64,000 nt of DNA from IMGVR_UViG_3300032242_002454:62001-126000; one strand, 5' to 3'. Positions 39,303-57,690 are shown, counted from the first letter of the stretch. The notes: generated from the sequence alone by a model not told the origin. Made by a program: numbers and translations.

Positions 39303-39521
39303 ATGCTTTTTGAAACTGGTTACAAAGTCATGATGAACAACCTTGACAAGATTTTTTCTGCTATGCGAGCTGGCAAGTATCACTGTGTGATTGACCCAAA
39401 GGGCAATGCTCATGTGGGCCTGATCAATGGTATCATGCGTGAAGATGGTAGTGGAAAGAATTGGATCGTGACGGTGACTAACCGTACAGTAAGTGAACAA
39501 GTGTTCATTCACGCATCTTGA
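39303..39521 (+). CDS. Hypothetical early protein
   Basis: Own promoter (39243); stop 5 nt before E2. Confidence 0.7.
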   Translation: MLFETGYKVMMNNLDKIFSAMRAGKYHCVIDPKGNAHVGLINGIMREDGSGKNWIVTVTNRTVSEQVFIHAS

Positions 39522-39525
39522 GACG

Positions 39526-39603
39526 TAAAGCCTTGACCGTAAAGGACTTACGGCGAGGCGGGCGGCCCCGGTTTGATGTAAGTGCTTGTGGGGTAACGAC
39601 TTA
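39526..39603 (+). repeat. Double-palindrome element E2
   Basis: taaagcctt-N7-aaggactta / 28 / taagtgctt-N7-aacgactta. Confidence 0.9.
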
Positions 39604-39610
39604 CGTCAAT

Positions 39611-39626
39611 TGGCACAGTATTTGCA
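39611..39626 (+). promoter_or_regulatory. Sigma-54 (-24/-12) consensus site
   Basis: TGGCACAGTATTTGCA (GG-N10-GC). Confidence 0.75.
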
Positions 39627-39731
39627 TTGCGAACCTTACGAAAATGTAAGGAAACTTTTCTCTTGCAAGCTAAAGAATACTCTGTATAATGTCGATATAA
39701 CAAGTAAGAGAGAAGAAAAGAGGATAAGAAA

Positions 39732-39917
39732 ATGGAAAATCTGAATTACGATCTGGTTTCTGATTGCTGTGGTGCTGGTTGTGCTTTCGAGACCGGTGAA
39801 GGTAAGGATAAGATCGGGATTTGCATGGATTGCAAGGAATGGTGTGGTGTGGTCGAGGACATTCCGGAAGATGAGGCCGACTACATTCCGGGCCTTGACG
39901 ATGGGGAGGGTATCTGA
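39732..39917 (+). CDS. Small Cys-rich protein with acidic tail
   Basis: SDCCGAGC...CMDCKEWC zinc-ribbon-like. Confidence 0.7.
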   Translation: MENLNYDLVSDCCGAGCAFETGEGKDKIGICMDCKEWCGVVEDIPEDEADYIPGLDDGEGI

Positions 39918-40001
39918 ACCTTACGACATTGCAAGGTTCAAGAGTTGACAAGCACCTAACCGATACTGTATAATAGACAAACAAGAAAGAGAGACTCCTA
40001 A

Positions 40002-40133
40002 ATGATTACGCCTATCGAATACGTTCAGCTGTTTGCCCTGATTGGTTTTGCTGGTTTCATTTCCTATACCGTTGGACAAGTGGGTAACGCTATCCACTGC
40101 ATCCTGCACGAAAACGACAACTACAACTACTGA
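40002..40133 (+). CDS. 43-aa single-TM peptide (not in track)
   Basis: MITPIEYVQLFALIGFAGFISYTVG...; promoter at 39945. Confidence 0.6.
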   Translation: MITPIEYVQLFALIGFAGFISYTVGQVGNAIHCILHENDNYNY

Positions 40134-40144
40134 AAGGTTCTCAG

Positions 40145-40462
40145 ATGACACACTTTGAAGCTATCAAGATGGTTCACGGCAAGACCAAGAAAAACTCTCG
40201 TAAGGTGGGCAACAACACCTATGCGGAAATTCTTCCTGATGGTAGCGTGGGGATCATGCTGCATAGCACCTATGTGGTGAAGATTCATCCCGACAATAGT
40301 GCTACCCTCAATAGTGGGGGTTGGCATACTCCTACGACTAAGGATAGAATCAATCAGTATTCGCCTGTACGGGTGTACCAACGCAAGGGACAGTGGTACC
40401 TCGAAAGTGGGGATGAGTACGAGGATGGGGTGGTGGTGGCCGATAACAACCTTATTTACTAG
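40145..40462 (+). CDS. Hypothetical early protein
   Basis: 105 aa; AAAGG RBS; stop 4 nt before E3. Confidence 0.75.
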   Translation: MTHFEAIKMVHGKTKKNSRKVGNNTYAEILPDGSVGIMLHSTYVVKIHPDNSATLNSGGWHTPTTKDRINQYSPVRVYQRKGQWYLESGDEYEDGVVVADNNLIY

Positions 40463-40465
40463 ACG

Positions 40466-40543
40466 TAAGTCCTTGTCCCTAAAGCACTTAGGGCAAGGCG
40501 GGCGGGCCGGGATCGACATAAGTGCTTACAAGGTAAGGGGTTA
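40466..40543 (+). repeat. Double-palindrome element E3
   Basis: taagtcctt-N7-aagcactta / 28 / taagtgctt-N7-aaggggtta. Confidence 0.9.
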
Positions 40544-40550
40544 TGGCAAT

Positions 40551-40566
40551 TGGCACGGTATTTGCT
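40551..40566 (+). promoter_or_regulatory. Sigma-54 (-24/-12) consensus site
   Basis: TGGCACGGTATTTGCT. Confidence 0.75.
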
Positions 40567-40681
40567 ATAGAAAGCTTACGAAATTATAAGGAAGATTTTC
40601 TGTTGTAGGCCATTGACAATGGACGATAATATGTGTAGAATAATCCAAGTTCAGCAACAACAACCACTCAGAGAGTATCTC

Positions 40682-40873
40682 ATGCGATCCTACTACGACC
40701 TGACCATCGACACCATCATCGTCACCGCTTGCTGCGGTGCTTACGCCATCACGCAGAATGGCAGGCAACGCAGTCGCCCGTCGCAACTCGTTCCGGGTGA
40801 GACCCTCACCTGTGAGGGGTGTGGTGGAGAACACCCGGTATTCGTTGAAGAAGATGTGGCTTGGGAGAATTGA
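40682..40873 (+). CDS. Small zinc-ribbon-like protein
   Basis: ACCG...CEGCG; follows promoter 40613. Confidence 0.65.
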   Translation: MRSYYDLTIDTIIVTACCGAYAITQNGRQRSRPSQLVPGETLTCEGCGGEHPVFVEEDVAWEN

Positions 40874-40962
40874 TCCGTAAAAGGAGACGTTTGTATACTA
40901 TGCTCTAACTGCTATGTGGCCCGGAGTTCCCGGATAGCTATCCCTAAAACCACGGGTGTTTA

Positions 40963-41040
40963 TAAGCCGTTATCCAGTAAGGACTTAGGATAACTTGGGC
41001 GGGCCGGGCTTGACGTAAGTCCTTTGCTCATAAGACTTTA
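40963..41040 (+). repeat. Double-palindrome element E4
   Basis: taagccgtt-N7-aaggactta / 28 / taagtcctt-N7-aagacttta. Confidence 0.9.
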
Positions 41041-41144
41041 CGACAACCTTACGGTATTGTAAGGAAACTTTCCTCTTGCAGGCTCAAGATGAGTATGGTA
41101 TAATGTCGATATAAGAGATAGAGAAGAAAGAAAGAGAGAAAAAG

Positions 41145-41327
41145 ATGTTTGAAATTGGTGACACAGTATCGTTCATGTGGGGAAAAGAGAAAAAAGTTGG
41201 TAAGATTGTTGGTTGGGAATATGACGAGGGTAATGTGTGGGAAGTGACCGTGACCCAGAGTATGAACGCATATTTTTCGGATGATAAACTGACTCCCGCG
41301 ACCGATACATGCGAGGTGTCAAAATGA
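41145..41327 (+). CDS. Small SH3/KOW-like beta protein
   Basis: FEIGDTVSF...GKIVG...VWEV pattern. Confidence 0.65.
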   Translation: MFEIGDTVSFMWGKEKKVGKIVGWEYDEGNVWEVTVTQSMNAYFSDDKLTPATDTCEVSK

Positions 41328-41521
41328 GCGTTTTCACTTTTCATCGAATTGATACTCACGAATATGTGGGAATGTTTTCTGGTAAGGATTGGATGGAGGC
41401 CAGACGTAAGGCTAGTATAAAAAGTGGAATACCAGTGGATGATATTCTACCTTGGGCTTTCAATACTGAAACCTTTCCCCTACCTGAGAGGGATGAGACT
41501 CCCCACTACCCCTATGACTGA
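41324..41521 (+). CDS. Hypothetical early protein
   Basis: GAGG RBS; coupled to the previous ORF. Confidence 0.6.
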   Translation: MSVFTFHRIDTHEYVGMFSGKDWMEARRKASIKSGIPVDDILPWAFNTETFPLPERDETPHYPYD

Positions 41522-41608
41522 ACCTTACGAAATTGTAAGGTTGACAGCATAAAATCAGTTTGGTATAATGCACACACAAGAGAACGATAGGCCTAAGAAA
41601 GAAAAGAA

Positions 41609-41794
41609 ATGAATCGGTTTTTCAAAGCAATCGGTGAAGATGGTGAGGTGCTGGGTATGGTCATTGCAGACAACGAGAGTCGGGCGGAAGTCCAGTTTCT
41701 GTTTCAGCCGTGGTGCAGTGTTTTCACGAAGTTCACGGTAATCGAATGCAGTCGGCAAGAGTTTTTCGACAAAGAGTTTGCATCCAAAAAGTAG
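41609..41794 (+). CDS. Hypothetical early protein
   Basis: Follows promoter 41541. Confidence 0.65.
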   Translation: MNRFFKAIGEDGEVLGMVIADNESRAEVQFLFQPWCSVFTKFTVIECSRQEFFDKEFASKK

Positions 41795-41813
41795 AGAAAG
41801 AAAGAGAAAGAAA

Positions 41814-42140
41814 ATGAAAACCAAGTTTCCCATCATTCAAGCTGCCAAGCGTCAAGCCCGTCTGTGCTTTCTTGGTATGGCGATTCCAACTGAAGTGAAA
41901 GACATTGATGGTGAGATGATTCAAGTGGAAAAGGTTCTGAAGTTCAATCGAACTGCCTTGAAGAATATGGGCAAGAGCAAGATGGAAAAGGTTGACCCGC
42001 GGATGATCGGTAGCGAGGATACTATGATCGTGCCAGTGGGCAAGCCGGGTAGCCGTGAACGTGTCGAGGAATTGACCAAGCAATATGGTGTTGTTGCTCA
42101 CCTTGAAATCAGCCCGTTCAGCTTCAAGGGGGAGGAATGA
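41814..42140 (+). CDS. Hypothetical early protein
   Basis: AG-rich leader; MKTKFPIIQAAKRQARLCF. Confidence 0.7.
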   Translation: MKTKFPIIQAAKRQARLCFLGMAIPTEVKDIDGEMIQVEKVLKFNRTALKNMGKSKMEKVDPRMIGSEDTMIVPVGKPGSRERVEELTKQYGVVAHLEISPFSFKGEE

Positions 42141-42188
42141 ACGACTGTACACTAGTAAACAGATATACAGTAAACGCAAAACTTGACG

Positions 42189-42266
42189 TAAACCCTTGCT
42201 ACTAAAGGACTTAGGGCAAGGCGGGCCGCCCCGGCTCGACGTAAGTGCTTATGCAACAATGACTTA
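42189..42266 (+). repeat. Double-palindrome element E5
   Basis: taaaccctt-N7-aaggactta / 28 / taagtgctt-N7-aatgactta. Confidence 0.9.
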
Positions 42267-42275
42267 CGACGACAT

Positions 42276-42291
42276 AGCAAATGCTGTGCCA
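42276..42291 (-). promoter_or_regulatory. Sigma-54 consensus site, reverse orientation
   Basis: Minus strand TGGCACAGCATTTGCT. Confidence 0.75.
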
Positions 42292-42398
42292 AATCATGTT
42301 AGAAATACCTTACAGCATTGCAAGGAAACTTTTTCTGGTCTACCCTATTGACATTTGACGATAATACTTGTATAATGATGAGACAAGAAAGAGAAGGA

Positions 42399-42623
42399 AT
42401 GAAAATGAGAAAGCCTCCGAAAAGTTCGACTGTCAAGGGTAAAATCAATGCCTACGCTTACAAGTGTGGGTTTACGTTTCATCCGAAAGAGGATGGATCG
42501 TTTGCTCTGTTCGACATTCACATGGGATACTACGTCTGCCGTGGTTCGCATGATCGTGTTGTCCAGTTCGTGATCGATGAATTGTGGGCGAAGTATTATC
42601 GGTCGCATCCGACCCCCGTATAG
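42399..42623 (+). CDS. Hypothetical early protein
   Basis: Promoter 42348; AAGGA RBS. Confidence 0.65.
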   Translation: MKMRKPPKSSTVKGKINAYAYKCGFTFHPKEDGSFALFDIHMGYYVCRGSHDRVVQFVIDELWAKYYRSHPTPV

Positions 42624-42683
42624 TGGGGGTTGACGATCATCTGCCAAATCACTACAATACAAACACAAGAAAGAGAGAATGGA

Positions 42684-42923
42684 ATGATTCAGATTGGTGA
42701 CAGGGTTCAAATTGGTTCTAGAATTGGTGCTGATCTTGCGTGGGCTGTTGTGGTGGACATTATCCCAGCCAATGACTATAGAGAAGCTATGTATCGTGTC
42801 CGGTTCGATGTTCCTGTGAACCGTGATGGACGCAGATCAGAAATCGTAACGATCACACCTAATCCTAATGAGTGCTGGGTGGATGATGGTATTGTGTTTG
42901 GTCCGTTTCTTGAGCAAAACTGA
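42684..42923 (+). CDS. Small SH3/KOW-like beta protein
   Basis: IQIGDRVQI...AVVVDI...MYRVRFD; promoter 42630. Confidence 0.65.
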   Translation: MIQIGDRVQIGSRIGADLAWAVVVDIIPANDYREAMYRVRFDVPVNRDGRRSEIVTITPNPNECWVDDGIVFGPFLEQN

Positions 42924-42935
42924 AAGGCTGAACAA

Positions 42936-43121
42936 ATGTTCTCACCGATGGAAAAGATTTGGATGGGCCTTGGATTGCAAGGCGCTCTGGAAATGATGGA
43001 TGCGTCATGCTCCCTGTGTGAAAGACTCACGGAAGAATGTGTGACCAATCCCCCAGTGAAAGATGCTTTGATTCAAAGCATTGCTGCTGAAATTATAGGC
43101 AATCGCCAGAGTAACTCCTAA
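42936..43121 (+). CDS. Hypothetical early protein
   Basis: Its TAA stop is the first 3 nt of E6. Confidence 0.6.
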   Translation: MFSPMEKIWMGLGLQGALEMMDASCSLCERLTEECVTNPPVKDALIQSIAAEIIGNRQSNS

Positions 43122-43196
43122 GTGCTTACCGCATAAGGACTTACGACACGGCGGGCGGGCCGCGTTTGACGTAAGTTCTTATGAGATAACGACTTA
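43119..43196 (+). repeat. Double-palindrome element E6
   Basis: taagtgctt-N7-aaggactta / 28 / taagttctt-N7-aacgactta. Confidence 0.9.
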
Positions 43197-43205
43197 CAAC
43201 AACAT

Positions 43206-43221
43206 AGCAAATGCTGTGCCA
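43206..43221 (-). promoter_or_regulatory. Sigma-54 consensus site, reverse orientation
   Basis: Minus strand TGGCACAGCATTTGCT, identical to 42276. Confidence 0.75.
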
Positions 43222-43325
43222 AAGTTTCTATCCAAACCTTACGACATTGTAAGGAAAGTTTTTCTGGTCTAAGCTATTGACAAACGACGATAATAATGGT
43301 AGAATGATAAGACAAGAAAGAGAGA

Positions 43326-43508
43326 ATGAAAATGGAAGAATTTTCCACTAGGGTTTTGCAAGATAATCTGTGGCTTGAGCAAGTCCGGCTCACTAGAGAT
43401 ACTGATCCTGAAATGATCGAACTGAGAAAACAGCATATTTCCTATCTTGCCACAGAATTGCTCCGTCGGTATCGTGCGGAGTCTTTGTCTCTGGCTAGTT
43501 CCAGCTAA
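43326..43508 (+). CDS. Hypothetical early protein
   Basis: Promoter 43277. Confidence 0.65.
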   Translation: MKMEEFSTRVLQDNLWLEQVRLTRDTDPEMIELRKQHISYLATELLRRYRAESLSLASSS

Positions 43509-43645
43509 CCCTGTCGGGTTGAAACGTGGCCTAGTCAGACTAGTCAGCGAACCCTGTGGGCCTTGTAAGGTTGACAACTAAAGTTTTGCAGTGTAGAATG
43601 TCGATAATAGATATAGGAAAGATGACCAGTAACCAAGAGGAATGT

Positions 43646-43843
43646 ATGATAGACTATATCAAGCGGTATGATTGGGTGGAGTTTGATTATAAGGGTGAGA
43701 ACTATCGTGGTGAAGTTCGTAGGGTTTTGGATAAGCCCAAGGGAAAGATGATGATTGTGAAAATCGGCCTGACCGAATATCGTTCGTGCTATCTTGACCA
43801 GTGCGAAAACATGATCCATGTTGCTAACACGGTGGAGGCTTGA
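43646..43843 (+). CDS. WYL/SH3-like small protein
   Basis: VEFDYKGENYRGEV...EYRSCYLDQC resembles WYL-type folds (inference); GAGG RBS. Confidence 0.55.
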   Translation: MIDYIKRYDWVEFDYKGENYRGEVRRVLDKPKGKMMIVKIGLTEYRSCYLDQCENMIHVANTVEA

Positions 43844-44034
43844 ACATGAATGGTTTTATTCTGGTGTGGGTTTGGATGGGGGCTATGCTTTTTGTTTTGG
43901 GTTTTGTATATTTCCTTTCTATTGTAAGGGAAGTCTGGCAGAGACTTGCCGAATATGAGAGAATGAAGTCTAGGGGCTTTACTCTTATGAAAGATGAAAA
44001 TGGTGATGAGTTCTGGGTAGGATATGGGGATTGA
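43840..44034 (+). CDS. Single-TM small protein
   Basis: FILVWVWMGAMLFVLGFVYFLSIV hydrophobic segment. Confidence 0.65.
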   Translation: MNMNGFILVWVWMGAMLFVLGFVYFLSIVREVWQRLAEYERMKSRGFTLMKDENGDEFWVGYGD

Positions 44035-44215
44035 CCCAATAACACTGGAGATACAGGGATGTATCAATTTGATTTTATTAGTGTTGCTTTTGGTTATATT
44101 GTCGGTATCTTACTCTCTGCTAGTATGTCACATATCATGTATATGGAGGAAAATGATGAAATCGAGTGACTACATCTTATGGGGGGTATGTTTTACCCTT
44201 GGCTGCATTATGACG

Positions 44216-44293
44216 TATCTCCTTCACCAGTAAGGACTTACGACCAGCCCGGCCCGCCCCGCGAAGCGTAAGTGCTTATGCTGCAACACTTTA
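44216..44293 (+). repeat. Double-palindrome element E7
   Basis: tatctcctt-N7-aaggactta / 28 / taagtgctt-N7-aacacttta. Confidence 0.85.
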
Positions 44294-44423
44294 CGTCAAC
44301 AAAAAGATTTTTCATGTTTGGCATGAAATTATATTTTGGAATTTTCCAAGTTCCTGCTTGACACTAGCCGATAATAAGTGTAGAATCACAACACACGAAC
44401 GGTAACCACTAAGGAACAGAATC

Positions 44424-45849: not shown

Positions 45850-45867
45850 AAAAATAATCTCTCGTCG

Positions 45868-45945
45868 TAAACCCTTTGTGTTCAAGCACTTAGGGCCGAC
45901 GGGGGCGGCCGGATTTGCCGTAAGTCCTTATGCGTCAACACTTTA
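45868..45945 (+). repeat. Double-palindrome element E9
   Basis: taaaccctt-N7-aagcactta / 28 / taagtcctt-N7-aacacttta. Confidence 0.9.
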
Positions 45946-46043
45946 CGTCAATCCTTACAATCTCGTAAGATTCAAGTTTACCCCTTGCAATAGACGATAA
46001 TAGATAGTAGAATACGATATAGAAGAAAGGCAAGGGTGAGAGC

Positions 46044-46782: not shown

Positions 46783-46818
46783 AAACTAGCAGTCTCTGCA
46801 CACTAACTGACCAACCCC

Positions 46819-46896
46819 TAACCCTTTGACACCAAAGGACTTAGGGCGAGGTCGGCCCGCCCGGCAAGTCGTAAGTCTTTATCTGACAACACTTTA
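46819..46896 (+). repeat. Double-palindrome element E10
   Basis: taacccttt-N7-aaggactta / 28 / taagtcttt-N7-aacacttta. Confidence 0.9.
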
Positions 46897-46980
46897 CGAC
46901 AATCTTTTTTGTTCAAGTTTTTCCTCTTGACAGGCCGATAATAGTAGTGTACAATACGAGGAACCTAAAGGAGAAAAAAG

Positions 46981-47498: not shown

Positions 47499-47702
47499 AT
47501 GTTGACAAGTGACGAAAGAGACGCTGTTTGTGGGTGTGTGGCTGATTTTGCTACTCGTTTGCTTACCGCTGCTACTATTGATGAGAAGTCTATGCACCAA
47601 GAACTGGATATTTTCTTTGAGTTCTTTTGTGAGGCTCTTGAGATTGCCAGAAGGGATGGGGTGGTTAGGGTTCGTGAGTCTATTGGTGCTAGTAATAACT
47701 AA
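47499..47702 (+). CDS. Hypothetical early protein
   Basis: Promoter 47450, GAGGA RBS; stop 4 nt before E11. Confidence 0.65.
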   Translation: MLTSDERDAVCGCVADFATRLLTAATIDEKSMHQELDIFFEFFCEALEIARRDGVVRVRESIGASNN

Positions 47703-47705
47703 TCG

Positions 47706-47783
47706 TAAGTCCTTATCCTTAAAGTACTTAGGGTAAGGCGGGGCGGCCGAATTTGACGTAAGTGCTTGTGTATCATAGGGTTA
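47706..47783 (+). repeat. Double-palindrome element E11
   Basis: taagtcctt-N7-aagtactta / 28 / taagtgctt-N7-atagggtta. Confidence 0.9.
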
Positions 47784-47859
47784 CATCAACTCTAAAAAAT
47801 TTTTGAAATTCCTATAGATAGGTGTTGACAACGGACGATAATAGATGTATACTTAGCAC

Positions 47860-48866: not shown

Positions 48867-49120
48867 TGGAATGGATTAGTTTTCACGGCCCTCGCCGCCC
48901 TATTAATGGTCAAAAGATAATCTATTATGGTGAGCCTATTGGTGTGTGGCGTGGAACATATAGGATAAATTATAATGATCCTTTTTGTATTCACAATATT
49001 GATTGTGGTGAAGCTCCCGGTAACGTAGACTATATGGATGCTCCGTGGTGGATGCCAGATGAGGGACAAGACAAGCCAGCACCGCCCAAAGAACATTATC
49101 CAAAAGATTATCCTAGTTGA
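48866..49120 (+). CDS. Hypothetical protein
   Basis: GAGG RBS; stop 3 nt before E12. Confidence 0.65.
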   Translation: MEWISFHGPRRPINGQKIIYYGEPIGVWRGTYRINYNDPFCIHNIDCGEAPGNVDYMDAPWWMPDEGQDKPAPPKEHYPKDYPS

Positions 49121-49122
49121 CA

Positions 49123-49200
49123 TAAGTCCTTGCTGCTAAAAGACTTAGCTCAAGGGCGCCCGGCCGGTTTCGTCGTAAGTCCTTGCTACTAAAGACTTTA
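49123..49200 (+). repeat. Double-palindrome element E12
   Basis: taagtcctt-N7-aaagactta / 28 / taagtcctt-N7-aagacttta. Confidence 0.9.
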
Positions 49201-49282
49201 CGATTAGCAATATTTCTTCAAGATTTCCTCTTGACTTGTCGATAATAGTAGTGTAAGATACTAGCAACACACGAAAGGGAAT

Positions 49283-50031: not shown

Positions 50032-50377
50032 GTCGTTGAACATGATTGCAAACGGTTGCAGTCTGGATATGTTCGACAAGATTGTGTGTGCGTTGGAGGT
50101 GGCGTTGGGTGTGAACCAGCGTCGTACCGTGACCATCACGGGTGGTATGACTCTCGACAATCGCATCCATTGCATCAAGGCAATTCGACTCCACACCGGA
50201 TGGGGTTTGAAGGAAGCCAAGGATTGGAGTGACTATCTGGTTGGTGGCTGGAAGTACGACAAGTGGTATCCAGCACCGGCAGGCGTTAAGCACAGCATGA
50301 CTCTGAAAACGCCCGAAGCGGCAGAGGCACTGCTGCGTGAATTGACTACCTTGGGTTGCGAGGGTTTTCTCTCTTGA
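50003..50377 (+). CDS. Ribosomal protein bL12 (L7/L12) C-terminal-domain-like protein
   Basis: NRIHCIKAIRLHTGWGLKEAKDWSD matches the bL12 CTD pattern K(I/V)xVIKxVRxxTGLGLKEAK. Confidence 0.7.
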   Translation: MIKIELSVRESLNMIANGCSLDMFDKIVCALEVALGVNQRRTVTITGGMTLDNRIHCIKAIRLHTGWGLKEAKDWSDYLVGGWKYDKWYPAPAGVKHSMTLKTPEAAEALLRELTTLGCEGFLS

Positions 50378-50379
50378 CC

Positions 50380-50457
50380 TAAAGCCTTGTCCCTAAAGAA
50401 CTTAGGGCGAGGCGGGGCGGCCGAATTTGATGTAAGTCCTTATCTGGAAAGAACTTA
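50380..50457 (+). repeat. Double-palindrome element E13
   Basis: taaagcctt-N7-aagaactta / 28 / taagtcctt-N7-aagaactta. Confidence 0.9.
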
Positions 50458-50661
50458 GGACAAAATCAAAAATCTTTGAGGCTCACTCAAGTTCATGGTT
50501 GACAATGACGATACTATACTGTAGAATGAGAGTATCACGAGACAAGACTCCGCGATGATGCCAACAACAGAAACCATCACGACGGACTTGACAAGTGGGT
50601 AACAGTAGCGTATACTGATACTAGAACGATTGGTAACTGTAACACTTTTGGAGAAGATAAG

Positions 50662-51540: not shown

Positions 51541-51568
51541 AATTTCCTCCATACCTTATAATACACCA

Positions 51569-51646
51569 CAAGTCCTTATTTGGCAAGTACTTAGGAGAAA
51601 TGCGGCGGGCCGGGTTTGACGTAAGTCGTTCTCGCATAAGGACTTA
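51569..51646 (+). repeat. Double-palindrome element E14
   Basis: caagtcctt-N7-aagtactta / 28 / taagtcgtt-N7-aaggactta. Confidence 0.9.
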
Positions 51647-51728
51647 GAGCAAAATATTTTTCACTAAAGAATATCTCTTGACTTAGCCGATTATTAGGTT
51701 ATACTTGATAGACACGAAAGGGAAAAGT

Positions 51729-53023: not shown

Positions 53024-53253
53024 TGAGCAAATACTATATCAAGTGTGGAACTCTAGAAATAATTTATTCCTGCAACAAATGCCCACGGGATGCTGCTATG
53101 GATGCTATCTGGGAAACAAATGAAAATGATACACTAGATGAGTATATCTATCTTGATGAACGTGGATATAGAGACTATAAAAATGCTGATGGTAAAACTT
53201 GTGTGTTGCATACTTCTCATATTCTCAAAGATGCTGGCTGGACATTAGAATAA
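53023..53253 (+). CDS. Hypothetical protein
   Basis: GAGG RBS; coupled. Confidence 0.65.
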   Translation: MSKYYIKCGTLEIIYSCNKCPRDAAMDAIWETNENDTLDEYIYLDERGYRDYKNADGKTCVLHTSHILKDAGWTLE

Positions 53254-53278
53254 ACATATAAAACAAAGGAGATATTTA

Positions 53279-53554
53279 ATGGAAAAGAAAGACGTACTAA
53301 ATAAGATGATTCCGGCCGATGATTTGCATTGGGTTGCTGATGAGGGTTTTGTGCTATTGAGTCTTGAAGAAGTAGAAGAGATTATTCAGACTGGGAAGGC
53401 TCAAGATATGTCTGAAGATGATATTATAAAGACCGTAAGATGGTGTGAGAGCATTAGAACCGGACAAGTATTATGGAAAAATATTCTAGCGGGAGGTATC
53501 CGTATTCATCACTTTGAAAATGACGAACCTATCTTTACGAAAGGCGTAGCGTAA
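53279..53554 (+). CDS. Hypothetical protein
   Basis: AAGGAG RBS. Confidence 0.7.
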   Translation: MEKKDVLNKMIPADDLHWVADEGFVLLSLEEVEEIIQTGKAQDMSEDDIIKTVRWCESIRTGQVLWKNILAGGIRIHHFENDEPIFTKGVA

Positions 53555-53562
53555 TCTTACCG

Positions 53563-53640
53563 CAAACCCTTGGTGCGTAAGCACTTAGGGCAAGCGGGGC
53601 CGCCCGGCTTTGACGTAAGTCCTTATCCGTCAACACTTTA
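53563..53640 (+). repeat. Double-palindrome element E15
   Basis: caaaccctt-N7-aagcactta / 28 / taagtcctt-N7-aacacttta. Confidence 0.9.
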
Positions 53641-53696
53641 GAGCAAATCTAAAAATCTTTTAAAGTTTCTCTACTAGACTGGTCGATAATATTGGT

Positions 53697-54092
53697 ATGG
53701 AAACGAAGCAAGAAATCAAAAGGAATGGACAGATGATCCAGTGGGTTGGGATTGTGATTACGATTTTGGGTTTGGCGTATACGGGAATCAAAGATTATCA
53801 AAAAGGTGATATAAAATTCCCTCCCATGCCTCAGAAACCGGCCTTGACAAAGATAGTTTATCCGGTACAATACTGTCTGATGGCTTACGACCCTAATGTT
53901 GACAAAGTTTTTTATCTACACGAAAACGGACAATGGCATGATTACGCTCCACAACAACGACGATACCAGACCACGCCGCAACCATATCAAGATCAAGGTC
54001 AGGCCGCAGTGGCAAGTTCCTACGGGTCACAAGGAACACCGCAATACTATTATGGACAATCGCCCCAAGCGTCTGCGAACCCGATCCGCTGA
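53697..54092 (+). CDS. Membrane-anchored protein with Q/Y-rich tail
   Basis: TM WVGIVITILGLAY; low-complexity C-terminus. Confidence 0.6.
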   Translation: METKQEIKRNGQMIQWVGIVITILGLAYTGIKDYQKGDIKFPPMPQKPALTKIVYPVQYCLMAYDPNVDKVFYLHENGQWHDYAPQQRRYQTTPQPYQDQGQAAVASSYGSQGTPQYYYGQSPQASANPIR

Positions 54093-54142
54093 AAAGCGTA
54101 GAGCTTGCGAGAGTGAGGATTATTGAGTATAATTAGTAGTAT

Positions 54143-54215
54143 GCCAGTGTAGCTCAGTCAGCAGAGCGTCAAATTTGTAATTTGAATGTCGCGGGTGCAA
54201 CTCCTGCCACTGGCT
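54143..54215 (+). tRNA. tRNA-Thr(TGT)
   Basis: GCCAGTG/CACTGGC; TCAAA-TTTGTAA-TTTGA; T-loop TGCAACT. Confidence 0.9.
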
Positions 54216-54281
54216 TTATGAGTCGAAAGAAAAAACGTATGTAAACGCTCTATCTGGTGTATATATTCGTATCCAGAGGAG

Positions 54282-54809
54282 ATGTCTATGATTGTAAAAT
54301 GTAGTTGCTGTAATAAAGAGTTTAATAAGCAGAAGTACGAGGTAATTAAGTCAAAAAATAATTACTGCTCACGTTCCTGTGCAGCAAAAATAAACAATAG
54401 GCTATTTAAAAAGAGAAGAAAAAAAGTTAGGCATTGTACGAACTGTAAGATTGAAATTATTGGCAAGGGAAAACTTTATTGTAGTATTAAATGTCAAAAT
54501 GTTTTTCAGTCAGAAATAAAGATAAAGTCATGGCAGCTAGGAATGGACGATGGATACGAAACTAATGGAACAGTAAGGAGGTATATAAAAAAATTCTTAC
54601 TGGAAAAAAGAGGTCAGAAATGTGAGGAGTGCGGTTGGAATAAAATCAATCCAAATACCAATAAGTGTCCATTGGAAATACATCATAGGGATGGAAATTA
54701 TAAAAATAATATAGAAGAGAACTTACAAATACTATGTCCGAATTGCCATTCATTGACAGATACATATAAGAATATGAACAAAGGTAATGGTAGAGAATGT
54801 AGAAGATGA
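54282..54809 (+). CDS. HNH endonuclease with N-terminal zinc-finger repeats
   Basis: CSCC...YCSRSC, CTNC...YCSIKC, CEECG...LEIHHRDGNYKNNIEENLQILCPNCH. Confidence 0.85.
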   Translation: MSMIVKCSCCNKEFNKQKYEVIKSKNNYCSRSCAAKINNRLFKKRRKKVRHCTNCKIEIIGKGKLYCSIKCQNVFQSEIKIKSWQLGMDDGYETNGTVRRYIKKFLLEKRGQKCEECGWNKINPNTNKCPLEIHHRDGNYKNNIEENLQILCPNCHSLTDTYKNMNKGNGRECRR

Positions 54810-54880
54810 TCCGGGATGGTGAAATGGTATCACAGCAGACTTTGGATCTGCGTTTCTACGTTCAAGTCGTAGTCCCGGAA
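54810..54880 (+). tRNA. tRNA-Gln(TTG)
   Basis: TCCGGGA/TCCCGGA; GCAGA-CTTTGGA-TCTGC. Confidence 0.9.
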
Positions 54881-54884
54881 TTAT

Positions 54885-54956
54885 TGGCGAGTAGCACAAC
54901 GGTTGTGCAAGCGGCTGTTAACCGCTAGGTTACAGGTTCGAATCCTGTCTCGCCAG
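54885..54956 (+). tRNA. tRNA-Asn(GTT)
   Basis: TGGCGAG/CTCGCCA; AGCGG-CTGTTAA-CCGCT. Confidence 0.9.
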
Positions 54957-54961
54957 CTTGA

Positions 54962-55048
54962 GGAAGAATGGCAGAGCGGTCTAATGCATCTGATTACTAA
55001 TCAGAAGAAGTGTAAAAACTTCCGTGGGTTCGAATCCTACTTCTTCCG
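54962..55048 (+). tRNA. tRNA-Ser with unusual ACT anticodon
   Basis: GGAAGAA/TTCTTCC; TCTGA-TTACTAA-TCAGA; long variable arm; canonical TTCGAAT T-loop. Confidence 0.85.
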
Positions 55049-55078
55049 TTCGGAGGCTGATGTTTGAGTTACGAAAAC

Positions 55079-55149
55079 ATTGGAGTAGTTCAACGGTAGA
55101 ATGACGGTCTCCAAAACCGTAGATGAGGGTTCGATTCCCTCCTCCTTTG
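55079..55149 (+). tRNA. tRNA-Trp(CCA), imperfect acceptor stem
   Basis: ACGGT-CTCCAAA-ACCGT; T-arm GAGGG-TTCGATT-CCCTC; acceptor ATTGGAG/CTCCTTT has two U-U mismatches. Confidence 0.65.
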
Positions 55150-55152
55150 CTT

Positions 55153-55224
55153 GGCCCCATAGTATAGTAGTTAGTACGCTGGCCTTTCACGCCGGAGACC
55201 TGGGAGCGTAACCCAGTGGGGTCA
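55153..55224 (+). tRNA. tRNA-Glu(TTC)
   Basis: GGCCCCA/TGGGGTC; CTGGC-CTTTCAC-GCCGG; atypical T-loop AGCGTAA. Confidence 0.85.
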
Positions 55225-55235
55225 TTTGTTTCTGC

Positions 55236-55275
55236 TAATCCTGCGGATTTGGAAGCTGTGGGAATAGTCAGCGAG
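55236..55275 (+). repeat. 40-bp family B repeat
   Basis: taatcctgcggatttggaagctgtgggaatagtcagcgag. Confidence 0.75.
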
Positions 55276-55346
55276 AATCCTAAAGTTTTGGGTGTTGACA
55301 GACCGATATTGGTATGGTAGACTGTTGGAACAAGAAAGGAAACTGT

Positions 55347-55520
55347 ATGAAGAATCTTCGTATCTACGACATTGTGACCGAGGATGGTAAAACTCTGGCA
55401 GATATTCAACTATCCATGCAAGAGGATTTTGAATGGTCGGATGTTTTTGATAAGCTCTATGATTTTACAACCGAGAGCGTCCAAAGTTATTCTTACGAGG
55501 AAATTACCGTAACCGAATAA
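55347..55520 (+). CDS. Small acidic hypothetical protein
   Basis: Promoter 55295; AAGGA RBS. Confidence 0.65.
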   Translation: MKNLRIYDIVTEDGKTLADIQLSMQEDFEWSDVFDKLYDFTTESVQSYSYEEITVTE

Positions 55521-55526
55521 TAAGGC

Positions 55527-55599
55527 GGGGCTTTAGCTCAGTTGGTAGAGCAAGGGTCTTTTAAACCTTTGGTCGTGGGTTCAAGTCCCACAGGCCCCA
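55527..55599 (+). tRNA. tRNA-Lys(TTT)
   Basis: GGGGCTT/AGGCCCC; AGGGT-CTTTTAA-ACCTT; TTCAAGT T-loop. Confidence 0.9.
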
Positions 55600-55651
55600 C
55601 TTGACAGTTGTTGATTGTTGGTGTAGAATAGAGGTAAGAAAGGGAGTAATT

Positions 55652-55828
55652 ATGAGATATGAAGATCACTATGATGGCTACAATTATGACTACGATGAAT
55701 TGGTAGAAAATACCGAGGATCTTGGTCTAGACGAAGAACCTTGGATGGATGGGTATGAGGAAGAAGATGACGAGGTTCCTTCATATGGTAAGAATTACTA
55801 TCCTAGTATTGAGGATGATCAGGACTGA
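55652..55828 (+). CDS. Highly acidic Tyr-rich small protein
   Basis: 23 D/E and 9 Y in 58 aa; promoter 55601, GGAG RBS. Confidence 0.7.
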   Translation: MRYEDHYDGYNYDYDELVENTEDLGLDEEPWMDGYEEEDDEVPSYGKNYYPSIEDDQD

Positions 55829-55890
55829 TTTTTGTGTGTGCTTCTAGGTGGGACTAGACCCTATTCTTTATTCCTTTCTTCTTCTCGGGA

Positions 55891-56418
55891 TTGTCGGTTC
55901 AAATCCGGCCACACACTTTTATGAACGCTTTCCAGCAAGAGCTTGATGATTTTCGACGTACCCCAGACGGTAAGATCATTCAAGGGGCTGCTCATACTAG
56001 CCGAGTATTAAATCACAAATATCGGAATGGTGTGATTATCAAGGCTGTCTGTTCTCTGCGTAAGATTGAGAATGATTTTGACAGTATTGCTTGTTGTGGC
56101 GTAAGTGGTTTGATGGTAGTGCCACAGATTGCGGAGATTCTCAATAAGAATATTATCGTTGTTCGTAAGGATGAAAGACGGTATAGTCAATTTTATATCG
56201 AAGGAGTATCTCCGTCTCGGTATGTTATTGTGGATGATTTGATTTGCTCTGGTGATACAATTAAGCATATTATTGGCAGTATTCATTTTGATACTCCGCG
56301 AGCAAAATGTATTGGTGCATATTTCTACATGGGTGAAGAGTGTGCCTACAATGCTTCTAATTCTAAACTTTTTGAGAAGCAGTTCGGGACGGTTATTCTA
56401 AACCCTTACGCTGATTAG
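55891..56418 (+). CDS. Type I phosphoribosyltransferase-like protein
   Basis: PRPP-binding motif YVIVDDLICSGDT; IACCGVSG; start may be ATG 55921. Confidence 0.8.
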   Translation: MSVQIRPHTFMNAFQQELDDFRRTPDGKIIQGAAHTSRVLNHKYRNGVIIKAVCSLRKIENDFDSIACCGVSGLMVVPQIAEILNKNIIVVRKDERRYSQFYIEGVSPSRYVIVDDLICSGDTIKHIIGSIHFDTPRAKCIGAYFYMGEECAYNASNSKLFEKQFGTVILNPYAD

Positions 56419-56476
56419 ACTTAGGACGAAACCGGGCGCCCCGGCGAGCCGTAAGTCCTTATCTATCAACCACTTA
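56399..56476 (+). repeat. Double-palindrome element E16 (overlaps the PRTase stop)
   Basis: taaaccctt-N7-ttagactta / 28 / taagtcctt-N7-aaccactta. Confidence 0.85.
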
Positions 56477-56578
56477 CGACGAAAAGAATTTTTCCAAAGT
56501 TTTCGCTTGACACTGCCGATAATATAGTGTAGAATCAGTGGACAAGAACGATTGAACAGCAACACGAAAGGGATGATT

Positions 56579-57532
56579 ATGGCTCATGCAGTTGAACAGA
56601 TGATGTTTGTTGGTGCGACCCCGTGGCACGGTCTGGGCAATAAGCTCGACGAAGCTCCCACGGTTTCGGAAGCGATGACCGCTGCCGGTCTGGATTGGGA
56701 AGTTGGTCTGAGAGATTTGATCACGCTGGAAACGAATCAACCCGTTCCAGCCCGTGCGACTTATCGCAAGACTGATGACAGCATCTTGGGCGTTGTCGGC
56801 CCGCGATACACTCCGCTGCAAAACAGCGAAGCGTTCGATTGGTTCCAGCCGTTTCTGGACGCTGGCGAGTGTGCATTGCATACTGCCGGTTCGCTCCACA
56901 GCGGTCAGAAGGTTTGGGTTCTCGCCCAACTGAACCGCGACAATAGCGAGATCGTGAAGGGTGACGAGGTTGGGAAGTTCATTCTTCTCAGCAACTCGCA
57001 CGATGGCACGACTGCTATTCGGGTTGGCTATACGCCGATCCGCGTTGTTTGTGCTAACACTATGGCAATGGCCCATAGCAAGAGCAGTGGTTCCAAGCTG
57101 ATCCGTATTCGTCACACCCGTTCCAGCAAGACCAATCTGGAAAACGTGCGAGACATTATGGACAACATCAACATGGAGTTTGAGGCGACTGCGGAACAGT
57201 TCAAGTTCCTCGCGTCCAAGAACTTCAATCAGGCCGACATTCGTCGCTATGTCAAGGTGATGCTTGACATTGACGGTACGCCGGACGATCAGATCAAGAC
57301 TCGTACCAGAAACATCATGGACGAGATTCTGAATCTGGTCGAAGGCCCGAAGCAGAGTGCGACGGGTGTTCGTGGAACTTGGTGGGCCGCGTACAACGGC
57401 TACAACGAGTACCTGAATTACAACAAGGGTCGCACGGAAGATAACCGTCTCGACAGCCTGTGGTTCGGACTCAACGCCAACGATAACACGAAAGCGTTGG
57501 AAAGGGCTATGGAGTTCGCTCAGGCACTCTAA
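56579..57532 (+). CDS. DUF932-family (TIGR03299-like phage/plasmid) protein
   Basis: MAHAVE...PWHGLG, LLSNSHDGTTA, TPIRVVCANT, RLDSLWFG; start may be 56573. Confidence 0.85.
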   Translation: MAHAVEQMMFVGATPWHGLGNKLDEAPTVSEAMTAAGLDWEVGLRDLITLETNQPVPARATYRKTDDSILGVVGPRYTPLQNSEAFDWFQPFLDAGECALHTAGSLHSGQKVWVLAQLNRDNSEIVKGDEVGKFILLSNSHDGTTAIRVGYTPIRVVCANTMAMAHSKSSGSKLIRIRHTRSSKTNLENVRDIMDNINMEFEATAEQFKFLASKNFNQADIRRYVKVMLDIDGTPDDQIKTRTRNIMDEILNLVEGPKQSATGVRGTWWAAYNGYNEYLNYNKGRTEDNRLDSLWFGLNANDNTKALERAMEFAQAL

Positions 57533-57557
57533 TCCCTCTCAATGGGGGTTGACACGG

Positions 57558-57593
57558 GAGCCGCCACTCAGCAATGGGTGGCGGTTCTTTTTT
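57558..57593 (+). terminator. Intrinsic terminator after DUF932
   Basis: GAGCCGCCACTCA-GCAA-TGGGTGGCGGTTC followed by a T run. Confidence 0.85.
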
Positions 57594-57612
57594 GTCTATA
57601 GGCAACTTGACA

Positions 57613-57690
57613 TAAACCCTTGTCAATAAAGGACTTAGGGCGGGCCGGGGCGGCCGAATTTTATCTAAGTTATTTGATACCAACGACTTA
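57613..57690 (+). repeat. Double-palindrome element E17
   Basis: taaaccctt-N7-aaggactta / 28 / taagttatt-N7-aacgactta; degenerate single palindromes follow at 57715, 57766, 57918 and 58469. Confidence 0.9.

What the first reader, a model, noticed from the sequence alone, without database searches (positions are those of the whole stretch)
39303..57690. Integron-like cassette layout: element after the stop codon, promoter and gene(s) after the element
Elements begin 3-5 nt after stop codons (39521/E2, 40462/E3, 47702/E11, 49120/E12, 50377/E13), supply the stop themselves (TAA 43119 in E6, TAA 44231 in E7), or overlap it (E16 and the PRTase stop). Each is followed by a promoter and 1-5 small ORFs. 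The arm-N7-arm / linker / arm-N7-arm layout parallels integron attC sites (two simple sites around a variable centre, folding as ssDNA) and functionally recalls T4-type PeSL shuffling cassettes. It lacks GTTRRRY. The N7 spacers differ between copies, which would block classical homology-dependent tyrosine recombination but not attC-type ssDNA recombination. Hypothesis: a phage-borne gene-cassette array for acquiring and shuffling host-takeover or anti-defence genes.
Basis: inference. Interest (0 to 1): 0.82.

Follow-up and report, generated by a model that had tools for sequence, protein, structure and literature searches.

The report
Repeated boundary elements between phage early operons
A 20-kb early-gene region of an uncultured freshwater jumbo phage is punctuated by 17 copies of a conserved ~92-bp four-armed DNA element that looks like a protein-binding boundary marker in front of each promoter. 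It sometimes serves as a patch for gene shuffling, but it does not behave like an integron recombination site.

Summary
The window has 16 full copies and one degenerate copy of a ~92-bp element, all in one orientation, only at 38.5-57.7 kb. Each sits at or a few bases after a stop codon and ahead of a sigma-70-type promoter. The family has about 620 copies in 136 related IMG/VR jumbo-phage loci.

The integron/attC reading is not supported:
- The arms are conserved in sequence, but pairing is no better than in shuffles for any fold.
- Neither strand folds better than the other.
- No element contains GTTRRRY, every cassette has its own promoter, and no recombinase was found among the window ORFs scanned.
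- Homology break points are spread along the whole element.
- Gene adjacency is lost as often at junctions without an element as at junctions with one.

The elements are positionally stable: 96-100% of relatives keep one at the same junction. A sister lineage has different arms in all its copies, with the same layout, which points to a trans-acting sequence-specific binder.

Gene gain, loss and reordering are real. Against the closest relative, two of six differences have crossovers inside elements, one lies in a duplicated promoter and one in a shared leader. That is the homology-driven pattern known from T4-type PeSLs.

Best reading: a protein-bound operon-boundary element within a PeSL-like regulatory cassette. 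Its molecular function is inferred, not shown.

The parts
38555..38626 (+). Element E0, a degenerate copy (right unit good, left unit decayed)
   Evidence: nhmmer 27.6 bits
39522..39611 (+). Element E1, starts 1 nt after stop TGA 39519-39521
40460..40551 (+). Element E2, abuts stop TAG 40460-40462
   Evidence: left parent of the hybrid element in L062
40961..41049 (+). Element E3
   Evidence: right parent of the hybrid element in L062
42183..42275 (+). Element E4
43115..43205 (+). Element E5; its first arm TAA (43119-43121) is the stop codon of ORF 42936-43121
44210..44301 (+). Element E6; ORF 44024-44233 ends inside unit 1
   Evidence: site of a 566-nt cassette insertion in L062
44945..45035 (+). 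Element E7
45863..45953 (+). Element E8
46816..46905 (+). Element E9
   Evidence: present at the same junction in 18/18 relatives
47700..47791 (+). Element E10, abuts stop 47700-47702
49117..49206 (+). Element E11, abuts stop 49118-49120
   Evidence: 16/16 relatives
50374..50465 (+). Element E12, abuts stop 50375-50377
   Evidence: 39/41 relatives; orthologue series
51565..51654 (+). Element E13, next to the minus-strand HNH endonuclease gene
   Evidence: 39/40 relatives
53557..53648 (+). Element E14; the only copy without a clear downstream sigma-70-type match
56394..56484 (+). Element E15, overlaps the stop (56416-56418) of the PRTase-like ORF
   Evidence: 49/51 relatives; orthologue series
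57607..57698 (+). Element E16, preceded by a canonical terminator; inverted or replaced in several relatives although the flanks are conserved
57556..57589 (+). The only canonical intrinsic terminator in the region (15-bp G+C-rich stem followed by a T run), just upstream of E16
39663..39690 (+). Sigma-70-type promoter after E1. Equivalent promoters follow the other elements at 38685-38712, 40613-40641, 41076-41104, 42348-42376, 43277-43305, 44358-44386, 45063-45090, 45985-46013, 46927-46955, 47825-47853, 49231-49259, 50499-50527, 51678-51705, 56507-56535 and 57726-57754
   Evidence: many carry a conserved CGATAA(T) motif in the spacer (families D5 and D7)
39634..39651 (+). Small hairpin CCTTACG-N4-TGTAAGG between element and promoter. 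Further copies at 39919-39936, 41047-41064, 41523-41540, 42308-42325 and 43237-43254
   Evidence: (D9, D18)
39611..39625 (+). Sigma-54-type motif TGGCAC-N5-TTGC directly after E1; a second + strand copy at 40551-40565 after E2
42277..42291 (-). Sigma-54-type motif on the minus strand, pointing into E4; a second copy at 43207-43221 points into E5

Best explanation
The elements are conserved operon-boundary modules of the early, many-promoter region of an uncultured freshwater jumbo-phage lineage.

Anatomy (shown). Each element is a large imperfect palindrome built from two asymmetric 25-bp units: a strong arm TAAGTNCTT, an N7 spacer, and a weak arm AANNNNTTA. The units lie head-to-head, with the strong arms facing a core of roughly 12-16 bp that is almost entirely G and C. 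An A/T-rich stretch and a strong sigma-70-type promoter follow.

Proposed function (inferred). The element most likely acts as double-stranded DNA bound by a sequence-specific trans-acting protein, for example two dimers. It would demarcate or regulate early transcription units as an insulator, a roadblock, a timed shut-off site or an enhancer-like site.

Recombination role (shown for individual events). Because copies are 60-80% alike, they also provide patches of homology, as the repeated promoters and purine-rich leaders do. General recombination at these patches deletes, inserts and reorders single genes or small operons, as described for T4-type PeSLs. No dedicated integron-like recombination needs to be invoked.
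For: (1) Sequence conservation, not pairing conservation. On 357 unique copies there is no long-range mutual information, and Watson-Crick frequencies at variable positions are at or below the independence expectation for every candidate fold. On a sequence-only alignment of 150 copies, two local hairpins give 73.2% of cells paired against 73.5% in shuffles. The whole-element fold gives 72.7% against 75.6%, and all 500 shuffles reach or exceed the observed value.

(2) A footprint-like divergence profile between orthologous copies: arms 0-5%, flanks 9.8%, centre 15-30%, inner N7 of unit 2 29-33%. The centre stays almost purely G/C while its sequence changes.

(3) Concerted arm switching. Loci L044, L033, L078 and L117 carry, at the same kind of position, a type-2 element with the same layout but different arms: CTGCCAAAAYGGCAG, a G+C core, then CTGCCAAAATGGCAG. 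The two types are essentially mutually exclusive per locus; the one exception is L135, with six type-1 copies and one weak type-2 match.

(4) Positional stability. An element is present at the same junction in 49/51, 39/41, 39/40, 18/18 and 16/16 relatives. It is absent in all relatives (0/41, 0/33, 0/25, 0/14) at four junctions that lack it in the window; at a fifth such junction 11 of 30 relatives carry one.

(5) Fixed geometry with the promoter: the -35 hexamer lies 21-33 nt after the element in 10 of 17 copies.

(6) No common RNA fold, and modest z-scores. No strand asymmetry. The region has one canonical terminator (57556-57589) and it sits directly in front of E16, so at that site the element is not needed as a terminator.

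(7) Homology-driven shuffling. Against the closest relative L062, two crossovers lie inside elements, one in the duplicated promoter and one in the shared leader. PeSL properties are taken from PMC2839356.
Against: - No binding protein has been identified. The conserved neighbouring genes of the type-2 locus L044 are no more divergent than those of type-1 relatives at a similar distance.
- Only 64 kb of a 204.6-kb genome was available, so a recombinase or a cognate factor encoded elsewhere cannot be excluded.
- Conserved palindromic arms would also fold as RNA or ssDNA. Absence of covariation weakens that reading but does not exclude it where the arms never vary.
- Sigma-54-type promoter motifs often point into the element, which would make its antisense strand part of a transcript.
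- The adjacency test rests on my own crude gene calls and identity thresholds.
Confidence: 0.55

Rival explanations
1. Integron-like system: the elements are attC-like sites that fold as single-stranded DNA and are recombined by a dedicated recombinase to capture and shuffle cassettes.
For: - The layout of two 9-N7-9 sites around a variable centre resembles two recombinase core sites.
- Two clean cassette indels relative to L062 have hybrid or duplicated elements at their borders, with the crossover in the shared G+C-rich centre or the right half.
- Non-complementary N7 spacers would be tolerated as an unpaired central spacer in an attC-like fold.
Against: - No compensatory changes. The attC-like fold pairs less well than column shuffles.
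- The outer arms mismatch at 3-4 central positions in most copies.
- No strand asymmetry in folding energy.
- No GTTRRRY in any copy.
- Homology break points are scattered along the element.
- Gene flux is equal at junctions with and without an element.
- Elements are stably inherited at fixed junctions.
- Every cassette has its own promoter.
- No recombinase among the window ORFs scanned.
- Crossovers also occur in promoters and leaders.
Confidence: 0.07
2. RNA-level element: the transcribed element acts as a 3' end, a processing site or an attenuator of the upstream operon, or as the 5' part of an antisense RNA started at the adjacent sigma-54-type promoter.
For: - The elements lie where terminators would be expected, and the 20-kb region has about 35 strong co-directional promoters but only one canonical terminator.
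- 88% of copies share the orientation of the early genes.
- 75 of the 111 sigma-54-type motifs that lie near an element point into it.
- More distant relatives carry repeated CCCCC-N6-GGGGG inverted repeats; their position relative to the genes was not examined.
Against: - The eight copies folded adopt different minimum-energy structures, with z-scores of -0.5 to -3.4.
- No covariation.
- No U tract after any stem.
- E16 sits directly after a true terminator.
- A genome-wide switch of arm sequence is not expected for cis-acting hairpins.
Confidence: 0.15
3. Enhancer (upstream activating sequence) for an enhancer-binding protein that drives the sigma-54-type promoters next to the elements. This is a special case of the protein-binding model.
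For: - The motif tTTGGCAc[ag]-N4-TTGCT occurs 203 times against about 9 expected, and 111 copies lie within 40 nt of an element, including type-2 elements.
- Conservation extends to consensus positions that the search pattern did not force: T before GG and T/A after TTGC.
- Two dyad sites are the usual enhancer layout (general knowledge of NtrC-type activators).
Against: - Only 4 of 17 window elements have the motif.
- Most motifs point into the element and abut it, which is too close for the usual DNA looping.
- No AAA+ activator gene was seen in the window.
- The host is unknown.
Confidence: 0.13
4. Selfish miniature transposable element (MITE/REP-like) that has spread through the intergenic spaces.
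For: - Terminal inverted repeats (TTGACGTAA... / ...TTACGTCAA), a size of about 92 bp, intergenic location and many copies.
- A few copies are inverted at orthologous sites.
Against: - Presence at orthologous junctions is 96-100%, and four of five junctions that lack an element in the window lack it in all relatives.
- Copies are confined to one 20-kb region, and 88% share one orientation.
- No target-site duplications.
- No transposase in the window.
- No arrays in any isolate bacterial genome.
Confidence: 0.05

Closest known systems
PeSL (promoter-early stem-loop) regulatory cassettes of T4-type phages (Arbiol et al. 2010, PMC2839356; Comeau et al. 2014, PMC4122927)
   Same: - Repeated composite motifs sit between small, mostly ORFan early genes in a hyperplastic region.
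- A strong sigma-70-type promoter has an A/T-rich upstream tract.
- A G+C-rich palindromic component lies upstream.
- Recombination between copies deletes, inserts or replaces genes, with crossovers at various positions in the motif (element, promoter, leader).
   Different: - The palindromic component here is not a simple G4...C4 stem-loop terminator. It is a 92-bp four-arm element with sequence-conserved arms, unconstrained spacers, no pairing covariation and a non-self-complementary G+C core.
- Lineage-specific arm types imply a specific binder.
- The phage lineage is unrelated to T4: the large terminase is only about 24% identical to any deposited phage.
- Terminator activity and mini-circles are untested.
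Integron attC sites
   Same: - They lie after the stop codon of a cassette.
- Two short inverted-repeat sites flank a variable centre.
- Copies differ in sequence.
   Different: - No GTTRRRY.
- Sequence rather than structure is conserved.
- No strand-specific fold.
- Cassettes have their own promoters.
- No integrase, attI or Pc found in the window.
- Break points are not fixed and are not confined to the elements.
Dispersed operator systems: mycobacteriophage L5/Bxb1 stoperators and KorB operators of IncP plasmids (from my own knowledge, not tested here)
   Same: Many copies of one protein-binding site are scattered through intergenic spaces, with an orientation bias relative to transcription (stoperators) or at variable distances upstream of promoters (KorB OB sites). 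They allow global control of many transcription units.
   Different: - Those sites are single 13-bp motifs with known binders.
- Here each site is a 92-bp double dyad with a G+C core, no binder is known, and the phage appears lytic with no repressor identified.

Membership tests
Integron attC site / integron cassette array | Conserved core sites R'' (RYYYAAC) and R' (GTTRRRY) at the ends | tested here: not met
   Neither pattern occurs in any of the 17 elements
Integron attC site / integron cassette array | Folded single-strand structure maintained by complementarity while the sequence varies | tested here: not met
   72.7% of cells paired against 75.6% in shuffles, with covariation below every shuffle; Watson-Crick frequency at or below expectation at variable positions
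Integron attC site / integron cassette array | Strand-specific (bottom-strand) folding | tested here: not met
   Mean minimum free energy of top and bottom strands differs by 0.6 kcal/mol with RNA parameters, with the opposite sign under DNA parameters; 56% against 44% of copies
Integron attC site / integron cassette array | Adjacent intI integrase, attI and a common Pc promoter; promoterless cassettes | tested here: not met
   Each module has its own strong promoter. No integrase among the window ORFs scanned. The rest of the 204.6-kb genome was not available.
Integron attC site / integron cassette array | Cassette gain and loss with junctions at one fixed crossover point in the site | tested here: not met
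   Homology change points are spread over all parts of the element. Crossovers also occur in promoters and leaders. Gene adjacency loss is equal at junctions without an element.
PeSL-type regulatory cassette | Strong sigma-70-like early promoter with an A/T-rich upstream tract, repeated between small early genes | tested here: met
   About 35 + strand promoters with at least 10 of 12 consensus matches in 20 kb; A/T-rich tract between element and -35 hexamer
PeSL-type regulatory cassette | Associated stem-loop that terminates or attenuates transcription | tested here: inconclusive
   Small CCTTACG-N4-TGTAAGG hairpins occur at six sites. The 92-bp element has no common fold and no U tract. Terminator activity cannot be tested here.
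PeSL-type regulatory cassette | Copies serve as sites of homologous exchange that produce gene indels and replacements in a hyperplastic region | tested here: met
   A hybrid E2/E3 element and an element-flanked insertion at E6 in L062; promoter and leader hybrids; module reordering in L061, L121 and L063; the anchor-to-anchor distance varies from 16.6 to 33.5 kb
PeSL-type regulatory cassette | Excised mini-circles | not testable with these tools
   Needs reads or outward PCR
MITE / REP-like mobile element | Insertion polymorphism at orthologous sites, target-site duplication, scattered distribution | tested here: not met
   96-100% positional conservation; no target-site duplication; confined to 38.5-57.7 kb of the window
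Sigma-54 enhancer (UAS) | Dyad-symmetric activator sites upstream of a -24/-12 promoter, plus an AAA+ activator | tested here: inconclusive
   The -24/-12 motif is strongly enriched beside elements, but most copies point into the element and no activator gene was seen in the window

The most novel reading that the evidence does not exclude
The elements are operators of a previously undescribed genome-wide control system of jumbo phages. A phage-encoded (or virion-delivered) sequence-specific protein would bind about 17 double-dyad sites that bracket every early operon. It would co-evolve with the arm sequence (type 1, 1b, 2). It would switch the whole host-takeover region off or over to a second programme, possibly by firing the adjacent sigma-54-type promoters, many of which run antisense into the preceding operon.
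Probability: 0.25. Interest if true: 0.75.

Novelty: new variant of a known kind. Interest (0 to 1): 0.5.

Why it matters
- It extends the PeSL principle (repeated regulatory cassettes that both organise early transcription and channel gene shuffling) to an unrelated, uncultured clade of 200-240-kb freshwater phages.
- It adds a component that PeSLs lack: a long, four-armed, apparently protein-recognised boundary element whose arms switch in concert between lineages.
- It gives a concrete handle for finding a global regulator of early (host-takeover) genes in jumbo phages. Profiling arm type against gene content in complete genomes, or pulling down proteins with the element, are the obvious routes.
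- It shows that an integron-looking layout can arise without integron mechanics.
- The abundant sigma-54-type promoter motifs, if functional, would be unusual for a phage and would narrow the host range to rpoN-bearing bacteria.

Tried and rejected
- Near-identity DNA search against deposited phages found nothing. The large terminase is only about 24% identical to Bacillus and Microcystis phages, so no cultured relative or host could be named.
- Rfam, at gathering and at E-value thresholds, gave only tRNAs in the region.
- A first synteny test with 120-nt flanks at 85% identity or more was confounded by divergence: 63% of control sites counted as broken against 76% of real sites. I dropped it in favour of protein-level adjacency.
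- Raw BLAST break points were enriched 2.3-fold inside elements (22 of 129 against 7.5% expected). That null ignores the fact that break points must fall between genes. The adjacency test removes the enrichment.
- An alternative stem (N7 of unit 1 pairing with the GGGCAAGG that follows) looked convincing in E1-E3 by eye and in individual folds, but it has no support across copies.
- I checked whether C.A mismatches become G.U pairs on the bottom strand. This holds in unit 1 and the opposite holds in unit 2, with no net asymmetry.
- A scan of one genome per bacterial and archaeal species with an element pattern gave arrays only on metagenome-bin contigs of inconsistent taxonomy. These are probably mis-binned phage contigs. 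No isolate genome carries an array.
- A search for the cognate factor by comparing gene identities of type-2 and type-1 loci gave no candidate.
- Literature searches for phage sigma-54 promoters or similar intergenic repeats found nothing relevant.
- The distant DUF932 locus L054 is an unrelated A+T-rich phage without such elements.

Full report
**Source and context.** Minus-strand genes at 1019-37606 are virion and late genes. They include a large terminase, a major-head-like protein, three proteins with a Mtd_N domain, a DUF285/fibronectin protein, a 4023-aa ORF and a sigma-like protein. From about 38 kb, small plus-strand genes follow. G+C content is 41-47% at 38-58 kb, against 31-38% elsewhere in the window. 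No deposited phage is close: there is no megablast match, and the terminase is about 24% identical to Bacillus and Microcystis phages. IMG/VR holds many relatives, several on contigs of 200-240 kb. I fetched 136 loci around two anchor genes.

**The observation.** The repeat is real.
- 16 copies share an 84-nt core.
- A profile HMM finds these 16 plus a degenerate copy at 38555-38626 and nothing else in the 64 kb. Every copy scores better on the + strand.
- The unit pattern TAAGTNCTT-N7-AANNNNTTA has 46 matches against 0.41 expected, all between 38542 and 57942.
- That scan also shows the true anatomy. Each 25-bp unit is asymmetric, with a strong arm and a weak arm. The two units lie head-to-head, with the strong arms facing a G+C-rich centre.
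- The family consensus over 357 unique copies is tgaCgTAAa.CCTTg.c.c.aAAGgACTTAGGgC.Ag...GGccGGCCgg.tTtGaCGTAAGTcCTTat....cAAcgacTTAcGaCAAa.
- A sigma-70-type promoter follows 16 of the 17 copies. Its -35 hexamer lies 21-33 nt after the element in ten copies, and 51-72 nt after it where a small hairpin and/or a TGGCAC-N5-TTGC motif is inserted.
- The region has about 35 strong plus-strand promoters and one canonical terminator.

**Spread of the family.** The HMM finds 623 places in the window and the 136 loci, giving 471 unique sequences. About 88% lie in the orientation of the early genes. A pattern scan of one genome per bacterial and archaeal species found arrays only on contigs of freshwater metagenome bins. 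Those bins are assigned to unrelated phyla, so the contigs are most likely mis-binned phage. No isolate genome has an array.

**Does it fold?**
- Eight copies folded as RNA give different structures, with z-scores from -0.5 to -3.4.
- On 357 unique copies, the top mutual-information pairs are all neighbouring columns.
- I tested four candidate structures: the whole-element (attC-like) hairpin, the two local hairpins, and an alternative stem that I had noticed by eye. For each, Watson-Crick frequencies at variable positions equal or fall below the product of the column frequencies.
- On an independent, sequence-only covariance-model alignment of 150 copies, the two local hairpins have 73.2% of cells paired against 73.5% in shuffles, and a covariation score of 0.095 against 0.095.
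- On the same alignment the attC-like fold has 72.7% against 75.6%, and all 500 shuffles are at least as high on every measure (499 of 500 on one).
- The outer arms mismatch at three or four central positions in most copies.
- Top and bottom strands fold equally well.

Pairing is therefore a by-product of a palindromic sequence motif. It is not what selection maintains.

**What selection maintains.** I compared orthologous copies whose flanks are at least 90% identical, which gave 123 distinct pairs.

| Segment | Divergence between orthologous copies |
|---|---|
| Arms | 0-5% |
| Flanks | 9.8% |
| N7 spacer of unit 1 | 6-15% |
| Centre | 15-30% |
| Four inner bases of the N7 spacer of unit 2 | 29-33% |

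- Series of orthologues of E12 and E15 show the centre changing freely while staying almost purely G/C, for example GGC-GGGGCG-GCC, GGC-CGGCCC-GCC and GGC-TGGGCC-GCC.
- This is the pattern of a protein footprint with a compositional constraint on the spacer.
- A G+C-only centre would also hinder cruciform extrusion. That follows from general knowledge of palindrome extrusion and is an inference.

**Arm-type switching.** At the PRTase/DUF932 junction, two relatives lacked a detectable element. Inspection shows a second type with the same layout: CTGCCAAAAYGGCAG, then a G+C-rich stretch of 12-14 nt ending in aaaa, then CTGCCAAAATGGCAG, in the same position after the stop codon and before the promoter.
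- L044 has 8 such copies, L078 has 7, L033 has 2 and L117 has 1. None of these loci has a type-1 copy, and no type-1 locus has type 2 apart from one weak hit in L135.
- L136 has diverged type-1 arms (AAGGSTTTA). L131 instead carries repeated CCCCC-N6-GGGGG inverted repeats, whose position relative to the genes I did not examine.
- A change of all copies in a genome to a new arm sequence argues for a trans-acting, sequence-specific partner. I could not identify it: the conserved genes next to the type-2 elements are no more divergent than in type-1 relatives at a similar distance.

**Are the elements the recombination sites?** The region is plastic. The distance between the two anchor genes ranges from 16.6 to 33.5 kb, and modules are lost, gained and reordered.

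Against the closest relative, L062 (91-97% identical), there are six structural differences:
1. The E2-E3 cassette is missing. A single hybrid element remains, identical to E2 on its left and to E3 on its right, with the switch inside the 12-nt core they share.
2. A 566-nt insertion at E6 is flanked by two element copies.
3. One gene was lost by a crossover within the duplicated promoter at 39006/39241.
4. One gene was lost by a crossover within the purine-rich leader.
5. and 6. Two further differences lie at other gene borders.

Across all loci:
- The points where homology to a partner ends are spread over the whole element, with no fixed position.
- At the protein level, adjacency of neighbouring genes is kept in 54% of comparisons at element junctions, 50% at other promoter-bearing junctions and 56% at short operonic junctions. 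The Mann-Whitney p values are 0.47 and 0.81.
- Elements are retained at the same junction in 49/51, 39/41, 39/40, 18/18 and 16/16 relatives. They are absent in all relatives at four of the five junctions that lack one in the window.

Gene flux therefore runs gene by gene and uses any shared regulatory repeat. This matches what Arbiol et al. describe for PeSLs, including crossovers at different places within the motif (PMC2839356). It does not match integron behaviour. No element contains GTTRRRY and none shows a target-site duplication. No recombinase is among the window ORFs scanned. The rest of the genome was not available.

**Function.**

*Shown:*
- the anatomy;
- the conservation pattern;
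- positional stability;
- arm-type switching;
- individual recombination events.

*Inferred:*
- The element is bound as duplex DNA by a specific protein.
- It acts as a boundary or regulatory module of early operons.

A terminator role is not supported by sequence: there is no U tract, no common stem, and E16 lies just after a true terminator. A protein roadblock or timed shut-off remains possible.

A further motif clouds the picture. tTTGGCAc[ag]-N4-TTGCT matches the sigma-54 -24/-12 consensus, including at positions the search did not force. It occurs 203 times against about 9 expected. Of these, 111 lie within 40 nt of an element, 75 point into the element and 36 point away, and the motif also accompanies type-2 elements. 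This keeps an enhancer function or an antisense-RNA function alive as rivals.

**Verdict.** The element is a new variant of the PeSL kind of regulatory cassette, with an unusual and probably protein-recognised four-arm boundary element.

Noticed in passing
window 39611-39625 (+), 40551-40565 (+), 42277-42291 (-), 43207-43221 (-); many related loci: A sigma-54-type promoter motif (tTTGGCAc[ag]-N4-TTGCT) is about 24-fold enriched in this phage family: 203 hits against about 9 expected. It usually abuts the elements, often pointing back into them, and it also accompanies type-2 elements. If functional, the host must have rpoN and the phage would make antisense transcripts into its early operons.
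   Followed up: partly
L044:760-11077, L078:276-7038, L033:1984-3195, L117:721-768: A second element type (CTGCCAAAAYGGCAG, a G+C core, CTGCCAAAATGGCAG) replaces type 1 at equivalent positions in a sister lineage and is mutually exclusive with it per locus. L136 has diverged type-1 arms. L131 has repeated CCCCC-N6-GGGGG inverted repeats.
   Followed up: partly
window 47857-48380: About 520 nt with no ORF of 40 aa or more lie directly after the strong promoter at 47825-47853. Parts of it (48198-48363) are 97.6-99.4% identical in relatives whose neighbouring sequence is about 80% identical. There is no Rfam match and the fold z-score is only -1.2. It may be a large non-coding RNA or another strongly constrained feature.
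   Followed up: partly
window 51055-51552 (-) and 54288-54809 (+): Two HNH homing-endonuclease genes lie beside tRNA genes (tRNA-Arg; between tRNA-Thr and tRNA-Gln). Most relatives lack both, so they look like recent mobile insertions.
   Followed up: partly
window 50982-51055 and 54143-55600: Eight tRNA genes (Arg-TCT, Thr-TGT, Gln-TTG, Asn-GTT, Ser-ACT, Trp-CCA, Glu-TTC, Lys-TTT) are embedded in the early region.
   Followed up: no
window 47399-47439, 55235-55275, 57844-57884; L044:1079, 4618, 11199, 11405: Another conserved repeat, CTAATCCnnCGGATTTG...GTAGTCAGC(C/G)AG, contains a short AATCC/GGATT hairpin. It is present in both type-1 and type-2 genomes. Its function is unknown.
   Followed up: no
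window, promoters at 40613, 42348, 43277, 44358, 46304, 47825 and others: The early sigma-70-type promoters share a conserved CGATAA(T) motif in the middle of the 17-nt spacer (TTGACA-N5-CGATAAT-N5-TAnAAT). This suggests an extra recognition element or a factor-binding site.
   Followed up: no
window 38000-58000 against the rest: The element-bearing early region has 41-47% G+C and strong positive GC skew. The virion genes and the small-gene region after 58 kb, which has no elements, have 31-38% G+C.
   Followed up: no
window 1019-13090 (-), 18766-20457, 23873-24589, 24609-26174 (-): A 4023-aa ORF has no Pfam match. Three proteins carry the N-terminal domain of the major tropism determinant (Mtd_N), as in targets of diversity-generating retroelements. 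No reverse transcriptase was seen in the window.
   Followed up: no
window 14395-16268 (+), 20539-21417 (-), 35150-36130 (-): Glycosyltransferase genes, an alginate-lyase-domain gene and a nucleotide-sugar epimerase gene lie among the virion genes. Two of them are on the opposite strand to their neighbours.
   Followed up: no
window 37812-38039 (+): The first plus-strand gene encodes a 75-aa protein with an AT-hook-like KKPRGRPSK motif. Its C-terminal 42 residues, the part used as the search query, have homologues in 67 related loci. It may be a small DNA-binding protein at the head of the early region.
   Followed up: no
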